Below are positions 56,093 to 63,999 of a stretch of DNA of 64,000 nt, piece after piece (the stretch's first letter is position 1; each line of letters starts with the position of its first letter). The position numbers and the translations under genes were made by a program. The notes under the pieces were generated by a model that was given only the letters and a program-made list of their open reading frames with translations, had not been told where the DNA came from and did no database searches. The stretch covers positions 124,001 to 188,000 of IMG/VR virus record IMGVR_UViG_3300005289_000052. One strand, given 5' to 3'.

Positions 56093-56133
56093 GGTAGCTC
56101 CCTCGTTACATACTTTATTGGCTACCTGTAAGA

Positions 56134-57905: not shown

Positions 57906-57923
57906 GGGCTACTCCTGAAGTGA

Positions 57924-57960
57924 CGGACATAAAAAGAAAAGGGGACCGAAGTCCCCTTTT
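57924..57960 (-). terminator. chmA terminator
   Basis: Minus strand AAAAGGGGAC-TTCG-GTCCCCTTTTCTTTTTATGTCCG. Confidence 0.8.
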
Positions 57961-57985
57961 GCTCAGTGCAACACGCTACCGCTTA

Positions 57986-60022
57986 TTAACGGTTCCAGGT
58001 CCCGGTGAAGGGGGAACCGAACATGCGGGAACCTTGTTGCTGACCGCCACCGTAGTTGAAGAAGCCACCAACGTTGTTGGCAACCAGGTGGTTGAGGTCG
58101 TAGCCGCCGCGCTGGGTCAGGACGTTGTTGTCGTCCAGGCCTTTCGCAGGACGCACGTTCAGACCGCAACGTACGATTGCTTCGGACAGCGCTTCCAGGA
58201 AGGAGTTGTCGAAGCTTACGCGACGAGCAAAGCCTTTGACGTGGATTTCCGATGCCAGGAGCTGACGCAGGATTTCTTTGCGCTGAGCCAGGCGGATTTC
58301 CAGAGGAACCTGGATGTTGCGGTGAGTTTCTTCCCACGCCTCGACCAGTTTCGGGTTGGTCTTGCCAGCCAGGTTGAGGATGGCCAGGTAGTCGATCTCA
58401 CGCAGGTCACGACGATTGCCTTCGCGATCGTAGTAGAAGCCCAGGTGGATACGGTCCTGATCGTCGTAGCACACTGGCTTGGACGCATCGAACAACTGCT
58501 GGAAGTGACCCATGGTCAGGTTGTTGGCTGCTTGCAGGATGGTCAGACGTGCGTTCTCGTCGCCGTTGGCGGCCGCGATGTAGGTCTGGTGAATCCAGGA
58601 CAGCTCGCCAACCTCGGCGATGTCGAGGGTGAAGATCAGCTTTTGACCGATCAGCATGTTGATGAGCTGGCGCATTTCGTTGTCACCGAAGTCGGCGGAA
58701 CGAGTTGGCAGTGCATCAGGCTTGGCTTGCGGATCGCCGGTCAGGTTGACTTCGTAACCGGTAGCACCCAGGTCTTTCAGGTCCACGTCGGTAGCCTTGC
58801 CCTTGTTGGCGCGCCAGGTACCGGTGAACAGGCCGTTGCGGTTCAGGCCGAAAGCAGTGGACAGGGCCAGGAGTTGCAGCTCCATGTTCACGGCGTCGGT
58901 CAGGGTGTCGACCGAGGTCAGCACCATACGCGGCTGGTACATCTGGGTAGCCATCATTTGCTGCTGGTTGCCGAACATGCCGAAGGCTTGCTGCTGAGGC
59001 TGGAAGCCTGCTTGAGCCGGTTGGTACATCAGGTCGACGTAGCCAGCGACGCGAGTCAGTTGGCGGGTCTGTTGCAGGCTGAACTGCGAGTCGGCTTGGG
59101 ACTGCGCGGACATGGTGACGATGATGTCTTCACGTACCGGCATGCCCACGATGTCTTCGCCGTGCTGACGAGTGAACTCGACGCGCGCGCTCAGTTGGTC
59201 GCCGGAGCCGACTTCACCCAGGGTGAACGGTTCTTCGTTGCCGCCGAGCTGGTTGTCCATGATGGTGTAGCAGGCCTGGGTGCTGTTGTGCAGCAGGCGG
59301 TTGAAGCGGTTCTCGGTGCTGACTTCAGCTTCGGCTGGAATCACAACGCCACCGGCATCGTGGATCTGAGCGTTGAAGCCGTAGCTGTTGATGACGAACT
59401 GCTCCAGAACTTGCCAGTACGACTTGTTCAGGTAGATGTCGCCAGGCACGATGTCGACTTCGACGGTGGTGCCGCCCAGGTTCACGCTGCTTGGGTCCAG
59501 TGGAGCGCCGCTCGATTCGACCAGCAGGCTGTAGACAGCGATGTGCTTCTGGCCCTGGTATTCTTCGTAGTAGCAGACCAGGATGCTGGAGAAAGTCACC
59601 TTGGACTGGTTGTTGTCCAGTACCAGGATGTTGAACTCTTTCTTCTGCTGTTCGGTCAGCACTTTGCCAGCGCGTTCTTTCAGACCCAGTTGAATGGTCT
59701 GAACGTCTTCACCGGACATGTTCCGTGGAACAGGGCGGCGGTGGTTGGCGTTGATGTCCAGGACCGAACGGCCACGGCTACCTACGCGGGAGTTGTTGTT
59801 GGATTGCTGGTTCATCTGAGCACCTGCGTTGAAAGGCTGTTGCGGTTGAGCATTGCCGCCAGTTGGCTGCTGTTGCTGCCCACCGGTTGGTTGTTGAGTT
59901 TGTTCTTGGGGCTGTTCAGCACCCGTTGGAGTCATACCCGCTTTCAGCATGGCATCTGCCATTGCGCTGTTCTGCGGCTGGTTCCCCTGGCTCTGGCCAG
60001 GTCCATTACGTTTGACGGACAT
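57986..60022 (-). CDS. chmA: Chimallin, major phage-nucleus shell protein
   Basis: 678 aa, very strong codon bias, disordered termini, directly upstream of the NADFDGD subunit (diagnostic synteny), own promoter and terminator. Confidence 0.88.
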   Translation of the reverse strand: MSVKRNGPGQSQGNQPQNSAMADAMLKAGMTPTGAEQPQEQTQQPTGGQQQQPTGGNAQPQQPFNAGAQMNQQSNNNSRVGSRGRSVLDINANHRRPVPRNMSGEDVQTIQLGLKERAGKVLTEQQKKEFNILVLDNNQSKVTFSSILVCYYEEYQGQKHIAVYSLLVESSGAPLDPSSVNLGGTTVEVDIVPGDIYLNKSYWQVLEQFVINSYGFNAQIHDAGGVVIPAEAEVSTENRFNRLLHNSTQACYTIMDNQLGGNEEPFTLGEVGSGDQLSARVEFTRQHGEDIVGMPVREDIIVTMSAQSQADSQFSLQQTRQLTRVAGYVDLMYQPAQAGFQPQQQAFGMFGNQQQMMATQMYQPRMVLTSVDTLTDAVNMELQLLALSTAFGLNRNGLFTGTWRANKGKATDVDLKDLGATGYEVNLTGDPQAKPDALPTRSADFGDNEMRQLINMLIGQKLIFTLDIAEVGELSWIHQTYIAAANGDENARLTILQAANNLTMGHFQQLFDASKPVCYDDQDRIHLGFYYDREGNRRDLREIDYLAILNLAGKTNPKLVEAWEETHRNIQVPLEIRLAQRKEILRQLLASEIHVKGFARRVSFDNSFLEALSEAIVRCGLNVRPAKGLDDNNVLTQRGGYDLNHLVANNVGGFFNYGGGQQQGSRMFGSPFTGTWNR

Positions 60023-60070
60023 CGTGTGTTCCTTTCATTGAGGGTGAGCACTACAACAAACCATTTGCCT

Positions 60071-60221
60071 ATGCTCTATTTAATTACACTTGGCATGGTC
60101 TCACTTAGGTAATATGTGGCTCAAATGACTTTGAATCAAACATCACCTAAGCGGGTTACCAAGATCATGCGCCCATAAATCTAAATGCCGAAGCATCCAG
60201 TTGAGAGCATTCTCCTATAAC
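60071..60221 (-). promoter_or_regulatory. Structured chmA leader containing an early promoter (60109-60128)
   Basis: Nested stems with G-U pairs on the minus strand; TCATTTGAGCCACATATTAC promoter motif; TATG at 60224-60221. Confidence 0.55.
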
Positions 60222-60243
60222 ATAGTGCAGTGTATGTAAGAAA

Positions 60244-60540
60244 TTACTTTATCCTCACATTACTGATCAGCGAGTAGACGGTAAGTCCTTTCGCTTTAGC
60301 AGCTTTTCGAGCATCCATCTCGGCTTGAAGTTCCATCATTGACTTGGAATCAAATTCAAACTCCGTGATATCGTGACCACGGTTGTTGCTGATCCCCAGT
60401 ACAACTTTGCGTTCGAACTTCTTTCTGGCCTTAACAGCGGCCTTCACCGGCTCCGATGCAACGGACACTTGACCAGTAGACTGGGCAATTGCCAAACGCA
60501 GTGCTGCTTCGAAATCCGAGAGTTCATTGCTAACAACCAT
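60244..60540 (-). CDS. Small basic hypothetical protein
   Basis: 98 aa, AGGAG SD. Confidence 0.65.
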   Translation of the reverse strand: MVVSNELSDFEAALRLAIAQSTGQVSVASEPVKAAVKARKKFERKVVLGISNNRGHDITEFEFDSKSMMELQAEMDARKAAKAKGLTVYSLISNVRIK

Positions 60541-60599
60541 GGTTCAACTCCTAAGTTGAAAAAGTTTATAAGACAGATTACCTTGTGTCTGTCACGTGG

Positions 60600-60619
60600 A
60601 TATTATGTATTTGAAATTC
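60600..60619 (-). promoter_or_regulatory. Early promoter variant
   Basis: Minus strand GAATTTCAAATACATAATAT followed by CCACGTG. Confidence 0.5.
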
Positions 60620-60648
60620 CTTTTAATCAACTCTAAAGGGCCGCCCCA

Positions 60649-61749
60649 ATGTACACCCTTTTCAATGAACCGATCTGGGGTACGCAAGGTGCTAGCATTA
60701 CCTTCCCCAAATATCAGCGAGCTATTCAGGGGCTGCGCCAGAATCTGGACAAGGTGATCGAGTACAACCGTACCTATCCACGTGCCGTTGATAGTGGTCA
60801 CTTCCTCGTGAAACTGCTGCAATCCCTTAACGTACCATTGTCCATGGACGTGAACATTTACAGGGATCGTGTCGAGGAAGCCGCAGAAGGTCTCGCTATG
60901 GCGATGAACCTCACCTCTTCATTATACCGTGGTCGAGTCTTTAGTCCAGGACTTTTCTACGGGCCGGGTTCCTACGAGATCGTGGTTGCCCATGCTGAGG
61001 AATTCGATTTACGGGATATTGAGGATAACTGGGAGCAGTTGTGCCCAGTGACTTTCCTGACTCACCCCAAGACCGACCTCGGAATGGATACCCCCATGGG
61101 TTTCCAAACCAACGGTGAAGAAGGGTTGTCGATTATCCTGATCAACATTCCCATGCTGGCTGTGCAGTATAAACAGTGGCGTATTCGGGAGTGGCACCAG
61201 AATAATGAAGCGCAGCGGACGATGATGCAGTTTGTATCCTCGTATCCCCTGAACAACGCTTTGCATTCGCAGTTGGACATTGCGATCCTGAACCGTTTCA
61301 TGAATGTCTACCGGGGAGACCCAGTGGGACTGAGCATGATCCGTAAACCGTTTACCATGACTCGATGGGAAGCGGAACTGGACTTTGGGTTGGATCAGTA
61401 CGCCGAAGACTTGCAGAAACGCAAGTATACCTTCGATCACTTCTTAGCTGTCTTTAAAGGAGTGTCAGCATGGACCCTACGAGACGCTCTACGCATTCCT
61501 ACGATGGCACCGACCCGTCAGGTCACGTGGGCGCTTGCGATGTCCAGAGCGCGTCTGGTGGACTTCCTGTTGGACTGGACCAAAGAGAACCGAGTGGATC
61601 GTAACAAGAGCTACTGTAACGATATCCAGTTGGAAACTTCTCGACTGCTGAATGACAGTGCTCTGCGTAGCTCCCTCCCGCGTTGGGCATATCCAGCTTG
61701 GGAAGACCTCTTTAAAGAGATCATCGCCAAAGCTAAAAGCGTCCGCTAG
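60649..61749 (+). CDS. Conserved protein (phiKZ gp52-like), putative virion component
   Basis: 366 aa between the polymerase and chmA, on the opposite strand. Confidence 0.6.
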   Translation: MYTLFNEPIWGTQGASITFPKYQRAIQGLRQNLDKVIEYNRTYPRAVDSGHFLVKLLQSLNVPLSMDVNIYRDRVEEAAEGLAMAMNLTSSLYRGRVFSPGLFYGPGSYEIVVAHAEEFDLRDIEDNWEQLCPVTFLTHPKTDLGMDTPMGFQTNGEEGLSIILINIPMLAVQYKQWRIREWHQNNEAQRTMMQFVSSYPLNNALHSQLDIAILNRFMNVYRGDPVGLSMIRKPFTMTRWEAELDFGLDQYAEDLQKRKYTFDHFLAVFKGVSAWTLRDALRIPTMAPTRQVTWALAMSRARLVDFLLDWTKENRVDRNKSYCNDIQLETSRLLNDSALRSSLPRWAYPAWEDLFKEIIAKAKSVR

Positions 61750-61793
61750 GGAAACGGGGAAGCCTTGCGGCCTCCCCGTTTCCCTTTATGCCG
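61749..61793. terminator. Bidirectional hairpin with TTTATGCCG
   Basis: GGGAAACGGGGA..TCCCCGTTTCCCTTTATGCCG; the polymerase stop codon lies inside the motif. Confidence 0.75.
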
Positions 61794-63999
61794 CTGCGGA
61801 TGCTGGGACAAAGTCCGAAACCAACTTGGTATTGTTGTCGTTAGACAAGAACACGCCGAGCGATTCCAAGATCAGATAGAACGGCCGGACTGTAGAGTAG
61901 ACCAGTTTACGAATGTTCATTGCTGACAATACTTCTTTTGGCAGACCAGTCAACTCCACAACGTCCTTCGGCAGCAGCAACGTGGTAGCGTTGGTTTTGC
62001 CAGCGTAGGTATCGGTGAGGGTTTGTTTGATCTGAGGATCTTCGATCGTATCCAACCACAGGCCCAATGCCGTTTTGTTAGGCAAGTCCAGGGAGACTTT
62101 GATCGCAGAGTACGGAGGTTTTGGAGCTTCCCCGTATTTTGGACGGAACACACGCTCCCACAGGAGGTAGTGTTGATAAGGAGACTGACCTGGGTTGACG
62201 TATGCCGCCGGGTCTTTCACCTGAGTCCGTGCCAAGTAAGTAGATTCAGCGCGCATCACAGAACCAATAATGCCGTGTTCGATATCAGCAACACGCTGCA
62301 TGATTTCCGTGATCTTGATCTTCTTGCCGTCGATGATGCAGTCCATGATTTCACACATGGTCGACGTCACTTGTTTCATGATCTGTGGCGGACAGTTAGA
62401 GTCTTTGAGGTAAACCCCTTTGATCTCTTCTTCCAGCTTCGAGAACACGTTCCCTTCTTTGGCTGCCTTGTAGGCGTAGTAATGCTTAGCCATCGAAGTC
62501 AGCGAGAACACCGAGAATGCAAACTCGTTCTTCATCGCCAATACGTTCAGCTTCTCTGGTACCACACCGAGTGTAGTGGACAGCATAGCCAAAACGTGGA
62601 TGATCGACTGGGTGGCCAGGTAAACCATGGTGTAGTCCACGGCAAACGCGGTTTCACTAAAGTCAATCTTACCGGTGTACCACTCAACCCAGTTCTGCAC
62701 GGTGAAGATCGTGGAGTCTGTGTCGGAGGTGATCGCTACGTGTCGGACAGAATCCCGAATCCATGCAACCGAGGCTGGCATGTTGTCGGATACCCAGAAC
62801 GCTTTGATCAGGTACTGGTATTCGTTCAGTACGTGGTGGATGTTCTTGATGGTTGCCCCGATCAAGCAGTAGCTCGTTGGGTTTACTTCCAGCAAGCGAC
62901 CCAGACCCAAACCTTGTAGCTCCTTAGCGCACAGGAGGCTCACAAACGCTTTTAAGTCCGCATCCATACCCTTGACATAGACCTTGGCTTCTTCCAGCTC
63001 CAGCGGCACTTCTACCTTCATGGAGAGGCGAGCCATGAACACCCGCATTGGTCCGTCGTTGAACTTCGCCAAGTGCCAGCAATCGCCGACATAAGCAAAG
63101 GCCGAACGTTGCAGATCGTTCATACCTTCAACCAGCTTACGGATTTCCGCAATCTGACTTTTGTTGGTCCAGTAGTGGTGAGTCGAGTAAAGGATCAGTT
63201 CCATTACTTCGTCTACGGTTGGAGCACGGAACCCGTAGAGGCTCATCGCTTTCTCAATCAGATCGTAGTCAACGTGACCGATGATGCTGACGATATTTGC
63301 CTTCACTACATCAGGACACCAATAATGTCGGTTGCCTGCCAAGAACTTCTCGTTGTTGGCGTTCCCCAAACTGGTGGCTACACGGCAGGTCGAAGTCAGG
63401 CTCGAGTGAGCAGACTTGTTGTGCAGGATCGTGGAGGTCGACGCTTGTGCCCCGGACAGACTGTTGTTCGCAATCTTGTACGTGGTTTGTTCGTTCTCCT
63501 TAAGTTCTGCCAGTTCTTCCATCTGTACAGCATGGCGGCGGAACTTCTTGACTGCTTCAACATCCCCGGCTTTCTCAGCCTCATCTGCTTTCAGATTGGA
63601 TTCTTGTTGCTCCATCTGTGCATTGTGACCTTCCTTCTTTACAGCACCCCGGCCCACAATGTTACCGGTGATGTATTCCGACAGTAGAGAAGGAATAACG
63701 TCCGGGTGTTCGTACACAGTCATGGACGGTGCAAACAACCAGTTGTTATCTTTGATGTCCTTGAGGTAGGTCGAGTAAGTCATCTCCGTACGCTCACGGT
63801 CACCGACTTTGTTCCGGTGCAGGCAGTACAGAGCTGGGTCTTTGATCTCGAATTTACCACCCGGACCTGTCACACGGTGAATGTACCCTTGACAGTCTTC
63901 CAACGGCTTCCCCGTACGCACATGCAAAAAGATTGCCATGTCACGACGGTAGTTAGCCAGAATATCTAGGTCGCGCTTATAAGCGGACGCTGGCTTGAT
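61786..63999 (-). CDS. Split family-B DNA polymerase, catalytic subunit (phiKZ gp50-like); 5' end probably beyond the window
   Basis: Motif B KIANNSLSG, motif C SDTDS, KHYY, IKGV. The frame is open to the window edge (IKPASAYKRDLDILANYRRD before Met 63939). Confidence 0.88.
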   Translation of the reverse strand: MKPASAYKRDLDILANYRRDMAIFLHVRTGKPLEDCQGYIHRVTGPGGKFEIKDPALYCLHRNKVGDRERTEMTYSTYLKDIKDNNWLFAPSMTVYEHPDVIPSLLSEYITGNIVGRGAVKKEGHNAQMEQQESNLKADEAEKAGDVEAVKKFRRHAVQMEELAELKENEQTTYKIANNSLSGAQASTSTILHNKSAHSSLTSTCRVATSLGNANNEKFLAGNRHYWCPDVVKANIVSIIGHVDYDLIEKAMSLYGFRAPTVDEVMELILYSTHHYWTNKSQIAEIRKLVEGMNDLQRSAFAYVGDCWHLAKFNDGPMRVFMARLSMKVEVPLELEEAKVYVKGMDADLKAFVSLLCAKELQGLGLGRLLEVNPTSYCLIGATIKNIHHVLNEYQYLIKAFWVSDNMPASVAWIRDSVRHVAITSDTDSTIFTVQNWVEWYTGKIDFSETAFAVDYTMVYLATQSIIHVLAMLSTTLGVVPEKLNVLAMKNEFAFSVFSLTSMAKHYYAYKAAKEGNVFSKLEEEIKGVYLKDSNCPPQIMKQVTSTMCEIMDCIIDGKKIKITEIMQRVADIEHGIIGSVMRAESTYLARTQVKDPAAYVNPGQSPYQHYLLWERVFRPKYGEAPKPPYSAIKVSLDLPNKTALGLWLDTIEDPQIKQTLTDTYAGKTNATTLLLPKDVVELTGLPKEVLSAMNIRKLVYSTVRPFYLILESLGVFLSNDNNTKLVSDFVPASAAA

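What the first reader, a model, noticed from the sequence alone, without database searches (positions are those of the whole stretch)
60023..60243. ~140-nt multi-stem RNA leader of chimallin that buries an early promoter
Seen on the minus strand: outer stem ATGCTCT (60210-60204)/AGAGCAT (60077-60071); hairpin CTGGATGC-TTCG-GCATTTAG; stem GCATGATCT/AGACCATGC; a ~13-bp stem GCTTAGGTGATGT/ATATTACCTAAGT; apical TCAAA-GTCA-TTTGA. Several G-U pairs work only on the mRNA strand. The early promoter (60109-60128) lies inside the structure and a TATG sits at 60224-60221. Inference: an early short leader lacks the fold, while longer later transcripts contain it. This could be a switch for chmA translation, stability or localisation, for example via ChmC or ChmA binding.
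Basis: partly seen in the sequence, partly recalled or inferred. Interest (0 to 1): 0.66.

Follow-up and report, generated by a model that had tools for sequence, protein, structure and literature searches.

The report
Structured two-promoter leader of chimallin gene
The 221-base gap in front of the phage nuclear-shell (chimallin) gene carries two promoter-like elements in tandem and a set of conserved RNA hairpins, one of which folds around the RNA copy of the early promoter. The layout recurs in many nucleus-forming jumbo phages, but its function is untested.

Summary
The minus strand of window 60023-60243 folds far better than shuffled sequence (z -4.95). The plus strand does not (z -1.07). 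G-U pairs outnumber A-C mismatches 60 to 7, so the selected structure is RNA in the chmA sense.

Their 3' halves instead form HP3, a conserved hairpin at the start of the short early leader.

The "early promoter" belongs to a family of about 19 promoters in this genome. Only the chmA copy sits inside a long hairpin.

Upstream lies a conserved TTAC-N15-TATAG element followed by two hairpins. It is found in front of chmA down to 29% protein identity, including Xoo-sp14. By eye, similar elements precede chmA in phiKZ, Goslar and RAY. It matches the published phiKZ middle-promoter pattern, and phiKZ chmA is known to have an early and a middle start site.

I read this as a tandem-promoter leader whose longer transcripts carry modular hairpins. 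These most likely protect or insulate the mRNA. Predicted ribosome-site access is the same in short and long leaders, so a translational switch is not supported. No transcript ends are available for this phage.

The parts
57986..60022 (-). chmA (chimallin, phage nuclear shell protein), 678 aa
   Evidence: PF25677 E 9.3e-61. A graded series of homologues from 100% to 29% identity.
60030..60034 (-). Shine-Dalgarno AAGGA, 7 nt before the ATG at 60022
   Evidence: Read. AAAGGAA is invariant in groups A-C.
60058..60101 (-). HP3: hairpin at the very start of the predicted early (short) leader. Its lower stem is ACCAUGCC/GGC..AUGGU and its upper stem is GUGU/GCAU.
   Evidence: MFE. 88-94% of cells paired in 10 relatives and 5 pairs changed on both sides. 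L047 replaces the lower stem by ACACAC/GUGUGU.
60100..60141 (-). Early (virion RNA polymerase type) promoter. The core ATATTAC is at 60115-60109. The start site is expected near 60102 (+/-3).
   Evidence: Twelve strong sites and about 7 weaker sites of one motif, all on the minus strand. The same motif precedes chmA in Goslar, RAY, 201phi2-1, phiKZ and RSL2. The start position is inferred from the phiKZ rule that the core is centred at about -10 (PMC7598289).
60102..60153 (-). HP2: 22-bp hairpin whose 3' arm and apex are the RNA copy of the early promoter.
   Evidence: -24.6 kcal/mol, z -7.48. The core pairs are conserved, with G-U/A-U swaps on the 5' arm only. L002 and L047 show compensatory changes below the core. 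The core's pairing probability with an upstream partner is 1.0 here, against at most 0.69 in the 18 other promoters of this genome.
60163..60177 (-). Invariant 15-mer TATGGGCGCATGATC. GCATGATC is also kept in group D at 47% ChmA identity. Its role is unknown. It contains a TATG, the phiKZ late-promoter core.
   Evidence: Invariant in 13 leaders. GCATGATC is present in groups A-D. It is not repeated elsewhere in the genome in this context. Its pairing partners differ between groups.
60181..60200 (-). HP1: 8-bp hairpin CUGGAUGC-UUCG-GCAUUUAG with a UNCG-type tetraloop
   Evidence: 98.9% of cells paired in 23 leaders and 7 of 8 pairs changed on both sides. Covariation score is 0.63 against 0.26 in shuffles, with 0 of 500 shuffles as high.
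60203..60214 (-). P2: small hairpin GAGA-AUGC-UCUC that begins 1-2 nt after the predicted middle start site
   Evidence: MFE. 81.5% paired in 23 leaders, with GC/AU exchanges at 2 of 3 pairs. Absent or different in group D.
60215..60239 (-). Putative middle-type (non-virion RNA polymerase) promoter: TTAC (60239-60236), 15 nt, TATAG (60219-60215).
   Evidence: TTAC (TTAA/ATAC in a few) and TATAG (TATAA in group C) are kept in all 23 aligned leaders, down to 29% ChmA identity. phiKZ has TACT-N17-TATGTAG at the same place. The published phiKZ middle motif is TACT centred 22 nt before the start site, and PHIKZ054 has such a secondary start (PMC8244752). Here the G at 60215 lies 22 nt after the A of TAC. 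Two other TTACA-N14-16-TATGTA sites lie just upstream of genes in this genome. No transcript ends are available.
60244..60540 (-). Upstream 98-aa ORF of unknown function. Its stop codon abuts the leader.
   Evidence: No Pfam or PHROG match. A small ORF occupies this position in most relatives but is absent in L048/L049. No similarity to PHIKZ053.
60591..60632 (-). Second, weaker early-type promoter (core ATAATAT) in front of the 98-aa ORF. It predicts a read-through transcript that contains the whole leader.
   Evidence: PWM score 28.1, against 41-60 for the strong sites. No terminator-like site between it and chmA apart from one weak in-ORF match. L048/L049 have an early promoter directly upstream of the 5' module.

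Best explanation
The spacer is a tandem-promoter leader of chmA.

A proximal early promoter (core 60115-60109) gives a short leader of about 80 nt that begins with hairpin HP3. About 115 nt further upstream lies a conserved element with the phiKZ middle-promoter pattern (TTAC-N15-TATAG, start near 60215). Further up is a second early-type promoter in front of the 98-aa ORF. Both predict longer transcripts.

Only these longer RNAs contain P2, HP1, the invariant 15-mer and HP2. In HP2 an upstream arm has been kept complementary to the RNA copy of the early promoter. The promoter sequence is otherwise fixed, A/U-rich and would be single-stranded.

The hairpins fold as independent modules and are not predicted to touch the ribosome-binding site. 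Most likely they act on the RNA itself:
- P2 and HP3 are stem-loops at the 5' ends of the two transcripts and protect those ends.
- HP1 and HP2 keep the long leader compact and hide the A/U-rich promoter copy from endonucleases.

This would make chmA mRNA from every promoter similarly stable and translatable.

Shown: the structures, their conservation and covariation, their strand, the promoter family, and the uniqueness of the chmA arrangement in this genome.

Inferred: both start sites, the existence of the long transcripts in this phage, and the protective function.
For: Structure and strand:
- Strand-specific excess stability.
- In the top 1% of genome windows.
- G-U 60 against A-C 7 in the helices.
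- Covariation in HP1 and P2 over 23 leaders, and in HP2 and HP3 over 10 leaders.

Promoters:
- Early-promoter family.
- Only the chmA copy is wrapped: pairing probability 1.0, against at most 0.69 in the 18 others.
- The same wrapping has probability of at least 0.8 in groups A-C, 201phi2-1, RSL2 and L036.
- PhiPA3's changed core (ATATCAC) has a matching GUGGU arm upstream, read by eye from the sequence.
- The 5' module is found by covariance model directly upstream of chmA in groups D and E, Xoo-sp14-like phages and L036.
- The module is single-copy in this genome.
- phiKZ, Goslar, RAY, RTH11 and 201phi2-1 show the same order of elements.

Modularity:
- The segment upstream of the early start folds on its own at z -4.1. 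The short leader as a whole is unremarkable at z -0.4.
- RBS accessibility is unchanged between short and long leaders.

Literature:
- PHIKZ054 has an early primary and a middle secondary start site (PMC8244752).
- PHIKZ054 is transcribed in several units, one together with PHIKZ053 (10.1101/2023.10.13.562163).
- Jumbo phages put several consecutive promoters before very abundant proteins (PMC11512511).
Against: - No transcript 5' ends or RNA reads exist for this phage. The only pieces from RNA-Seq-labelled runs are contigs that may be DNA.
- The middle-promoter assignment rests on a short pattern and on analogy. Only 2-3 further sites of that pattern were found in this genome.
- HP2-type pairing is weak in group D, group E, Xoo-sp14 and phiKZ (probability 0.14-0.28), so it is recurrent but not universal.
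- The invariant 15-mer is not explained by the model.
- The protective function is a plausible reading of the anatomy, not a result.
- The alignment used was fitted to the model's structure and leans towards it.
Confidence: 0.55

Rival explanations
1. Attenuator or leader-derived small RNA. P2 and HP1 stop part of the transcription that starts at the middle-type promoter or comes from the upstream ORF. This releases a short structured RNA of about 40-60 nt and meters read-through into chmA.
For: HP1 is a very stable hairpin with a UUCG loop, like many terminators of this genome. It sits 15-35 nt after the predicted start. In 201phi2-1, termination sites immediately after promoters and eight 5'UTR-derived small RNAs were reported, one with a conserved fold in phiKZ, EL and PhiPA3 (PMC11512511).
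Against: HP1 is not followed by a U-tract in the window or in most lineages. The terminator scan finds nothing in the spacer. HP1 has only 8 pairs, 2 of them G-U. The genome's real terminators have long G+C-rich stems and a conserved TATGCCG flank that is absent here. This model does not explain HP2.
Confidence: 0.15
2. RNase III processing site. HP2, a 22-bp irregular helix, is cut in long transcripts. The cut separates the upstream ORF's message from chmA and leaves a chmA mRNA whose 5' end lies close to the early start site, so all transcripts mature to the same short leader.
For: HP2 has the length and the small internal loops typical of phage RNase III sites such as those of the T7 early region (own knowledge). 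Its 3' arm ends exactly at the predicted early start. The helix is under selection on the RNA strand.
Against: In group C the helix has only about 15 pairs. In groups D and E, Xoo-sp14 and phiKZ it is weak or absent. The host is unknown, and no cleavage data exist.
Confidence: 0.12
3. One reading: a regulatory switch. The long-leader fold is bound by a phage protein (ChmC, ChmA or another) or changes conformation to control translation, export from the phage nucleus, or localisation of chmA mRNA made late.
For: The 5' module keeps primary sequence as well as pairing: the invariant 15-mer, the GAAU-type P2 loop and the UNCG loop. It is specific to chmA and is conserved more deeply than a plain stabiliser would need. 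In group A the 15-mer can pair either with the P2 region or with the 5' half of HP3.
Against: The alternative pairings are not conserved outside group A. Predicted RBS accessibility does not differ between leaders. No Rfam family matches. ChmC eCLIP showed no sequence preference and peaks near start codons in general (10.1101/2023.09.22.559000).
Confidence: 0.13
4. A DNA-level element. The inverted repeat around the early promoter forms a cruciform or is a protein-binding palindrome that tunes promoter use.
For: The repeat is centred on a promoter. N4 virion RNA polymerase uses hairpin promoters (PMC4496689, own knowledge).
Against: The 11 other strong early promoters of this genome have no such repeat. 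The helices hold 60 G-U pairs against 7 A-C, so the other strand would be full of mismatches. The plus strand folds no better than chance. Arm changes preserve pairing, not sequence.
Confidence: 0.03

Closest known systems
phiKZ PHIKZ054 (chmA) upstream region with early primary and middle secondary start sites (Wicke et al. 2021, PMC8244752)
   Same: Same gene and same neighbours: a divergent virion-protein gene, a small ORF, a long spacer, chmA, then an RNA polymerase beta' subunit gene. An early promoter lies about 70-95 nt before the AUG. A TAC(T)-N17-TATGTAG element lies about 90-115 nt further upstream, with hairpins between the two.
   Different: No detectable DNA similarity, and ChmA is under 30% identical. 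The hairpin sequences differ. Wrapping of the early promoter is weak in phiKZ (probability 0.18). The start sites are mapped in phiKZ but only predicted here. I found no published description of the RNA structures.
Conserved 5'UTR-derived small RNA upstream of the tail gene gp182/gp277 in phiKZ-like phages (PMC11512511)
   Same: A structured, conserved RNA segment lies between a jumbo-phage promoter and an abundant protein's gene. It was recognised by position and fold rather than by sequence.
   Different: That RNA ends by premature termination. Here no terminator is evident, and the segment contains a second promoter.
5'-terminal stabiliser stem-loops of bacterial and phage mRNAs (E. coli ompA leader type; own knowledge)
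   Same: P2 begins 1-2 nt after the predicted middle start and HP3 1-2 nt after the predicted early start. This is the geometry that shields 5' ends from RppH and RNase E.
   Different: The start sites are not mapped, no half-life data exist, and HP1 and HP2 are internal rather than terminal.
RNase III processing hairpins of the T7 early region (own knowledge)
   Same: A long irregular helix of about 22 bp lies in an intercistronic spacer of a phage early transcription unit.
   Different: The helix length is not conserved among relatives. No cleavage evidence exists, and the helix embeds a promoter.

Membership tests
phiKZ-type early (virion RNA polymerase) promoter | A highly conserved A/T-rich core of about 10 nt, with further conserved positions near -20 and -30, repeated before early operons of the same genome | tested here: met
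   Twelve strong and about 7 weaker sites share the motif gaAtnaAAnaAATcTcAnrtryATATTACynnaGTGaa, all on one strand. The chmA site scores 45.1. The criterion comes from PMC7598289 and PMC11512511.
phiKZ-type early (virion RNA polymerase) promoter | Transcripts start about 7-10 nt after the core, independently of host RNA polymerase and of protein synthesis | not testable with these tools
   No raw RNA reads for this phage. Only contigs were available.
phiKZ-type middle promoter | A TAC(T) motif centred about 22 nt upstream of the start site | tested here: met
   TTAC is at 60239-60236 and the conserved TATAG ends 22 nt after the A of TAC. The pattern is kept in 23 leaders. phiKZ has TACT-N17-TATGTAG. 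The criterion comes from PMC8244752. This is a sequence pattern only.
phiKZ-type middle promoter | An A-rich repeat precedes the motif, and the motif recurs before other middle genes | tested here: inconclusive
   The upstream 20 nt are A/T-rich but are the end of an ORF. Only 2-3 further TTACA-N14-16-TATGTA sites were found in the genome.
Intrinsic terminator / attenuator | A G+C-rich stem-loop directly followed by a run of U | tested here: not met
   No terminator-like site in 60023-60243. HP1 is followed by AUUUAUGGG here and by non-U-rich sequence in other lineages.
RBS-sequestering translational switch | The Shine-Dalgarno/AUG region is paired in one transcript form and free in the other | tested here: not met
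   Mean unpaired probability of the SD is 0.56 in both forms in the window. It is similar in most of 16 lineages, with a clear drop in the long form in only 3 (L056, phiKZ, Goslar). This is a thermodynamic prediction only.
Known RNA families (Rfam 15, including riboswitches and phage RNAs) | A match to a curated covariance model | tested here: not met
   Only chance-level hits (E at least 0.34), none in the leader on the right strand.
5'-terminal stabiliser stem-loop | A hairpin within a few nt of the transcript's 5' end, whose removal shortens half-life | tested here: inconclusive
   The geometry fits the predicted start sites, but the starts are inferred and half-life cannot be tested.
RNase III processing hairpin | About two helical turns of mostly paired RNA, cut by RNase III | tested here: inconclusive
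   22 bp in the window, about 15 bp in group C, and weak elsewhere. Cleavage is not testable.

The most novel reading that the evidence does not exclude
The segment from the TATAG start region through P2, HP1 and the following conserved bases, together with the promoter-wrapping helix, is a dedicated cis-regulatory RNA element of the chimallin gene. It would be shared across Chimalliviridae and would distinguish nucleus-made or read-through chmA mRNA from vesicle-made early mRNA. A phage or host factor would read it to set the timing, export, localisation or amount of shell-protein synthesis.
Probability: 0.25. Interest if true: 0.75.

Novelty: new variant of a known kind. Interest (0 to 1): 0.55.

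Why it matters
Chimallin must be made first and in large amounts for the phage nucleus to form. Blocking its mRNA stops infection in phiKZ (PMC12571901).

How its synthesis is controlled after the nucleus closes is not known. At that point transcription moves from the injected vesicle to the nucleus and to a different polymerase.

A leader layout kept from 100% down to about 29% protein identity, with hairpins that exist only on the longer transcripts, gives a concrete and mutable target for that question. It can be tested in cultured phages such as phiKZ, Goslar, 201phi2-1 and Xoo-sp14.

It also gives a sequence handle, TTAC-N15-TATAG plus two hairpins, for the poorly defined middle promoters of these phages. 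If the hairpins turn out to be plain stabilisers, the result is ordinary but still useful for annotation and for phage engineering.

Tried and rejected
- DNA similarity to cultured phages: none.
- Rfam: nothing.
- A 9-codon mini-ORF (ATG 60210 to TAG 60181) overlaps HP1 and stays open in groups A-C. I rejected it as a leader peptide. The SD-like AGGAG is 1 nt from the ATG, the peptides are unrelated, group D has no ATG, and the predicted middle start lies inside the SD.
- TATGGGCG as a copy of the genome's common TATGCCG motif: rejected. That motif is the 3' flank of about 40 G+C-rich terminators, which have nothing in common with HP1. A late-type TATG promoter at 60177-60174 is neither supported nor excluded.
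- A three-way junction closed by CUAUG/UAUGG: the pairs are A/U-rich, need register shifts between groups, and the 5' strand lies upstream of the predicted start. Left as unproven.
- A small palindrome CTAT-GTT-ATAG (CCCTAT-NNN-ATAGGG in Xoo-sp14-like phages) overlaps the TATAG start region. It may be part of the promoter. Not resolved.
- Long-range pairing of UUACAU (60238-) with the HP3 loop RUGUAA: short, A/U-rich, and upstream of the predicted middle start. Not pursued.
- Pairing of the 5' end UUUCUU with the SD in the full-spacer MFE: not conserved in group C.
- Sigma-70 promoter reading of TTACAT/TATAGG: the spacing is 12-15 nt and the scan finds none in the spacer.
- Scan of IMG/VR for the 15-mer: only the six relatives already held. 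The other 26 hits were chance matches.
- Sequencing runs: no run on record as RNA holds the stretch well. One 2.6-kb contig at about 90% identity, from a run labelled RNA-Seq, spans upstream ORF, leader and chmA, and two 151-nt pieces cover 60162-60336. The tool rates these runs as probably DNA, so they show nothing about transcripts.
- A first genome-wide folding scan timed out and was repeated with non-overlapping windows.
- The 98-aa upstream protein has no detectable similarity to PHIKZ053 or to any Pfam or PHROG family.

Full report
**Setting.** The window is bases 124001-188000 of a 243,669-bp virus record with direct terminal repeats. The ORF at 57986-60022(-) is chimallin (PF25677, E 9e-61). 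It is followed by an RNA polymerase beta'-like gene. A 98-aa ORF (60244-60540) precedes it, and beyond that lies a divergent 366-aa gene related to a virion protein family. This is the gene order around phiKZ gene 54. The finding concerns the 221-nt spacer 60023-60243.

**Is the fold real?**
- On the minus strand the spacer folds at -70.6 kcal/mol against -50.7 +/- 4.0 for dinucleotide shuffles (z -4.95, 0 of 200). On the plus strand z is -1.07.
- Among 2204 non-overlapping 221-nt windows of the genome, on both strands and corrected for dinucleotide content, it ranks 22nd. Most of the better ones are terminators.
- Most of the excess lies upstream of the early start. HP2 alone has z -7.5 and the 113 nt from 60215 to 60103 have z -4.1. 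The 80-nt short leader has z -0.4.
- In the conserved helices, G-U pairs outnumber A-C mismatches 60 to 7. Selection therefore acts on the chmA-sense strand as RNA, not on a DNA cruciform.

**Relatives.** No cultured phage is similar at the DNA level, and the closest cultured ChmA is about 30% identical. Public assemblies give a graded series:

| Group | ChmA identity | Loci |
|---|---|---|
| A | 86-92% | L002, L003, L047 |
| B | 73% | L004, L026-L028 |
| C | 67-72% | L005-L007, L030, L050, L052 |
| E | 56% | L048, L049 |
| D | 45-48% | L008-L012, L029, L053, L054 |
| F | 41% | L056, L057 |
| Xoo-sp14-like | 29% | L017-L019, L060 |
| — | 32% | L036 |

- HP1 is paired in 100% of cells, with two pairs changed on both sides.
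- The 13-bp stem is 83.5% paired. Its six core pairs are essentially invariant in pairing. The 5' arm toggles between G and A opposite fixed U, and there are three compensatory pairs in the lower part.
- The apical stem is 88% paired.
- The outer stem (64%) and GCATGATCT/AGACCATGC (67%) lose pairing outside group A and have no compensatory change.
- The minimum-energy model instead pairs their 3' halves with each other to form HP3 (60101-60058). HP3 is 88-94% paired and five pairs change on both sides. L047 replaces its lower stem ACCAU/AUGGU by ACACAC/GUGUGU.

The supported picture is therefore a row of hairpins (P2, HP1, HP2, HP3), not one closed 140-nt domain.

**The early promoter.**
- ATATTAC with about 26 conserved bases upstream and GTGA downstream occurs at 12 strong sites and about 7 weaker sites, all on the minus strand.
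- The chmA site spans 60141-60100.
- The same motif precedes chmA in Goslar, RAY, 201phi2-1, phiKZ and RSL2.
- By the published rule that the core is centred near -10 (PMC7598289), transcription should start near 60102. That is the last paired base of HP2 and one or two bases before HP3.
- Of the 19 promoters in this genome, only the chmA one is wrapped. The probability that its core pairs with an upstream partner is 1.0, against a maximum of 0.69 elsewhere.
- The same wrapping has probability of at least 0.8 in groups A-C, 201phi2-1, RSL2 and L036. It is 0.47-0.57 in Goslar and RAY, and below 0.4 in groups D and E, Xoo-sp14, phiKZ and PhiPA3. It is recurrent, not universal.

**The upstream module.**
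- The 83 nt from the stop codon of the small ORF to GCATGATC are more conserved than the protein. A 15-mer is invariant in 13 leaders.
- A covariance model of this segment finds it once in the genome.
- The model finds it directly upstream of chmA in groups D and E (E about 1e-3), in Xoo-sp14 and its relatives (E 0.03-0.15), and in L036 (E 0.08). The weak E-values gain weight from position and from inspection.
- In the resulting 23-sequence alignment HP1 is 98.9% paired and seven of eight pairs change on both sides. P2 is 81.5% paired with GC/AU exchanges. The covariation score is 0.63 against 0.26 +/- 0.03 in shuffles, and at most 0.17 when partners are slid. This alignment was fitted to the model and leans towards it.
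- Constant across all 23 are TTAC (or a one-base variant) and, 15 +/- 2 nt later, TATAG.
- phiKZ has an A-rich run, then TACT, 17 nt, TATGTAG, two hairpins, and then its early promoter. Goslar, RAY, RTH11, LucasX and 201phi2-1 show the same order.
- This is the published phiKZ middle-promoter pattern: TACT centred 22 nt before the start, preceded by an A-rich repeat. The same paper reports that PHIKZ054 has an early-type primary start and a middle-type secondary start (PMC8244752). PHIKZ054 is also co-transcribed with PHIKZ053 (10.1101/2023.10.13.562163).
- In the window the G at 60215 lies 22 nt after the A of TAC, and P2 begins at 60214.

I therefore read 60239-60215 as a middle-type promoter, by homology of pattern and position. 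This is an inference, because no transcript ends are available.

**Other sources of long transcripts.** A weaker early-type promoter lies at 60632-60591, before the 98-aa ORF. Nothing like a terminator separates it from chmA. In L048/L049 the small ORF is missing and an early promoter sits directly upstream of the module. The long leader is therefore expected early as well as later. Reads could not settle this. The runs that hold the stretch are DNA or of uncertain kind, and they are available only as contigs.

**What the hairpins do.**
- The predicted unpaired probability of the SD/AUG region is the same in short and long leaders in the window (0.56 in both). It is similar in most of 16 lineages, so RBS masking is unlikely.
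- HP1 lacks a U-tract, and the genome's real terminators look different. This weakens the attenuator reading.
- The geometry fits end protection and insulation. P2 and HP3 sit at the predicted 5' ends of the two transcripts. HP1 carries a UNCG loop typical of purely structural hairpins.
- HP2 buries a long A/U-rich stretch that cannot change, because it is a promoter. Only its partner arm evolves, and it does so in a way that keeps pairing with U.
- I commit to this reading with moderate confidence for the anatomy and low-to-moderate confidence for the function. RNase III processing at HP2, attenuation at HP1 and a protein-read switch remain live rivals.
- The invariant 15-mer is unexplained. 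It contains TATG, the phiKZ late-promoter core. In group A it can pair with either the P2 region or the 5' half of HP3, but neither pairing is conserved further.

**Novelty.** Two start sites for phiKZ chmA, multiple promoters before abundant jumbo-phage proteins, and conserved structured 5'UTR RNAs are published (PMC8244752, PMC11512511). In the searchable library I found no description of conserved RNA hairpins in the chmA leader, of their spread across chimalliviruses, or of the promoter-wrapping helix. The library is incomplete.

**Limits.**
- All start sites are predicted.
- The covariation statistics rest on 10-23 related sequences.
- The cultured-phage comparisons beyond Xoo-sp14 are by eye and by single-sequence folding.
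- The controls for promoter wrapping come from one genome.

Noticed in passing
Whole genome G000; in the window e.g. 2649(-), 3785(+), 4380(-), 11039(-), 19162(-), 23941/23978, 33013(-), 39283/39321, 61787(+): About 40 G+C-rich terminator hairpins share conserved flanks: GCATAA before the stem and TATGCCG(T) after it. Several are bidirectional pairs. TATGCCG occurs 45 times in the genome, most of them at such hairpins. The motif contains TATG, the phiKZ late-promoter core, so it could be a combined terminator and promoter cassette, or a polymerase-specific termination signal.
   Followed up: partly
Whole genome G000; in the window 10999, 29957, 32984, 50673, 60115, 60606 (all minus strand): All 19 early-type promoter matches (PWM score above 12) lie on the minus strand. 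Several sit 10-30 nt after a terminator.
   Followed up: partly
window 61641-61861, both strands: This is the most stable 221-nt window of the whole genome (-103.6 kcal/mol, z -5.5 against genome windows). It lies between the convergent 366-aa gene and the DNA polymerase gene and includes a long terminator hairpin with the TATGCCG flank.
   Followed up: no
window 60181-60210 (-): A nine-codon ORF (ATG CTC ... TAG) overlaps HP1 and stays open in groups A-C with unrelated peptides. It is judged a by-product of the hairpin.
   Followed up: yes
window 56107-56130 (-) and genome 205180 (-): TTACA-N14-16-TATGTA(A/G) sites lie 20-40 nt upstream of start codons. They are possible further middle-type promoters of this phage.
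   Followed up: partly
L048/L049 1199-1500: In the 56%-identity relatives the small upstream ORF is absent. Two early-type promoters stand in tandem about 200 nt apart, with the 5' module between them.
   Followed up: partly
window 57920-60112 (+): A 730-codon open frame lies antisense to chmA. It is taken as a shadow frame of the G+C-biased coding strand and was not examined.
   Followed up: no
window 60244-60540 (-): The 98-aa ORF before the leader has no Pfam or PHROG match and no similarity to PHIKZ053, although a small ORF holds this position in most relatives and in phiKZ.
   Followed up: partly
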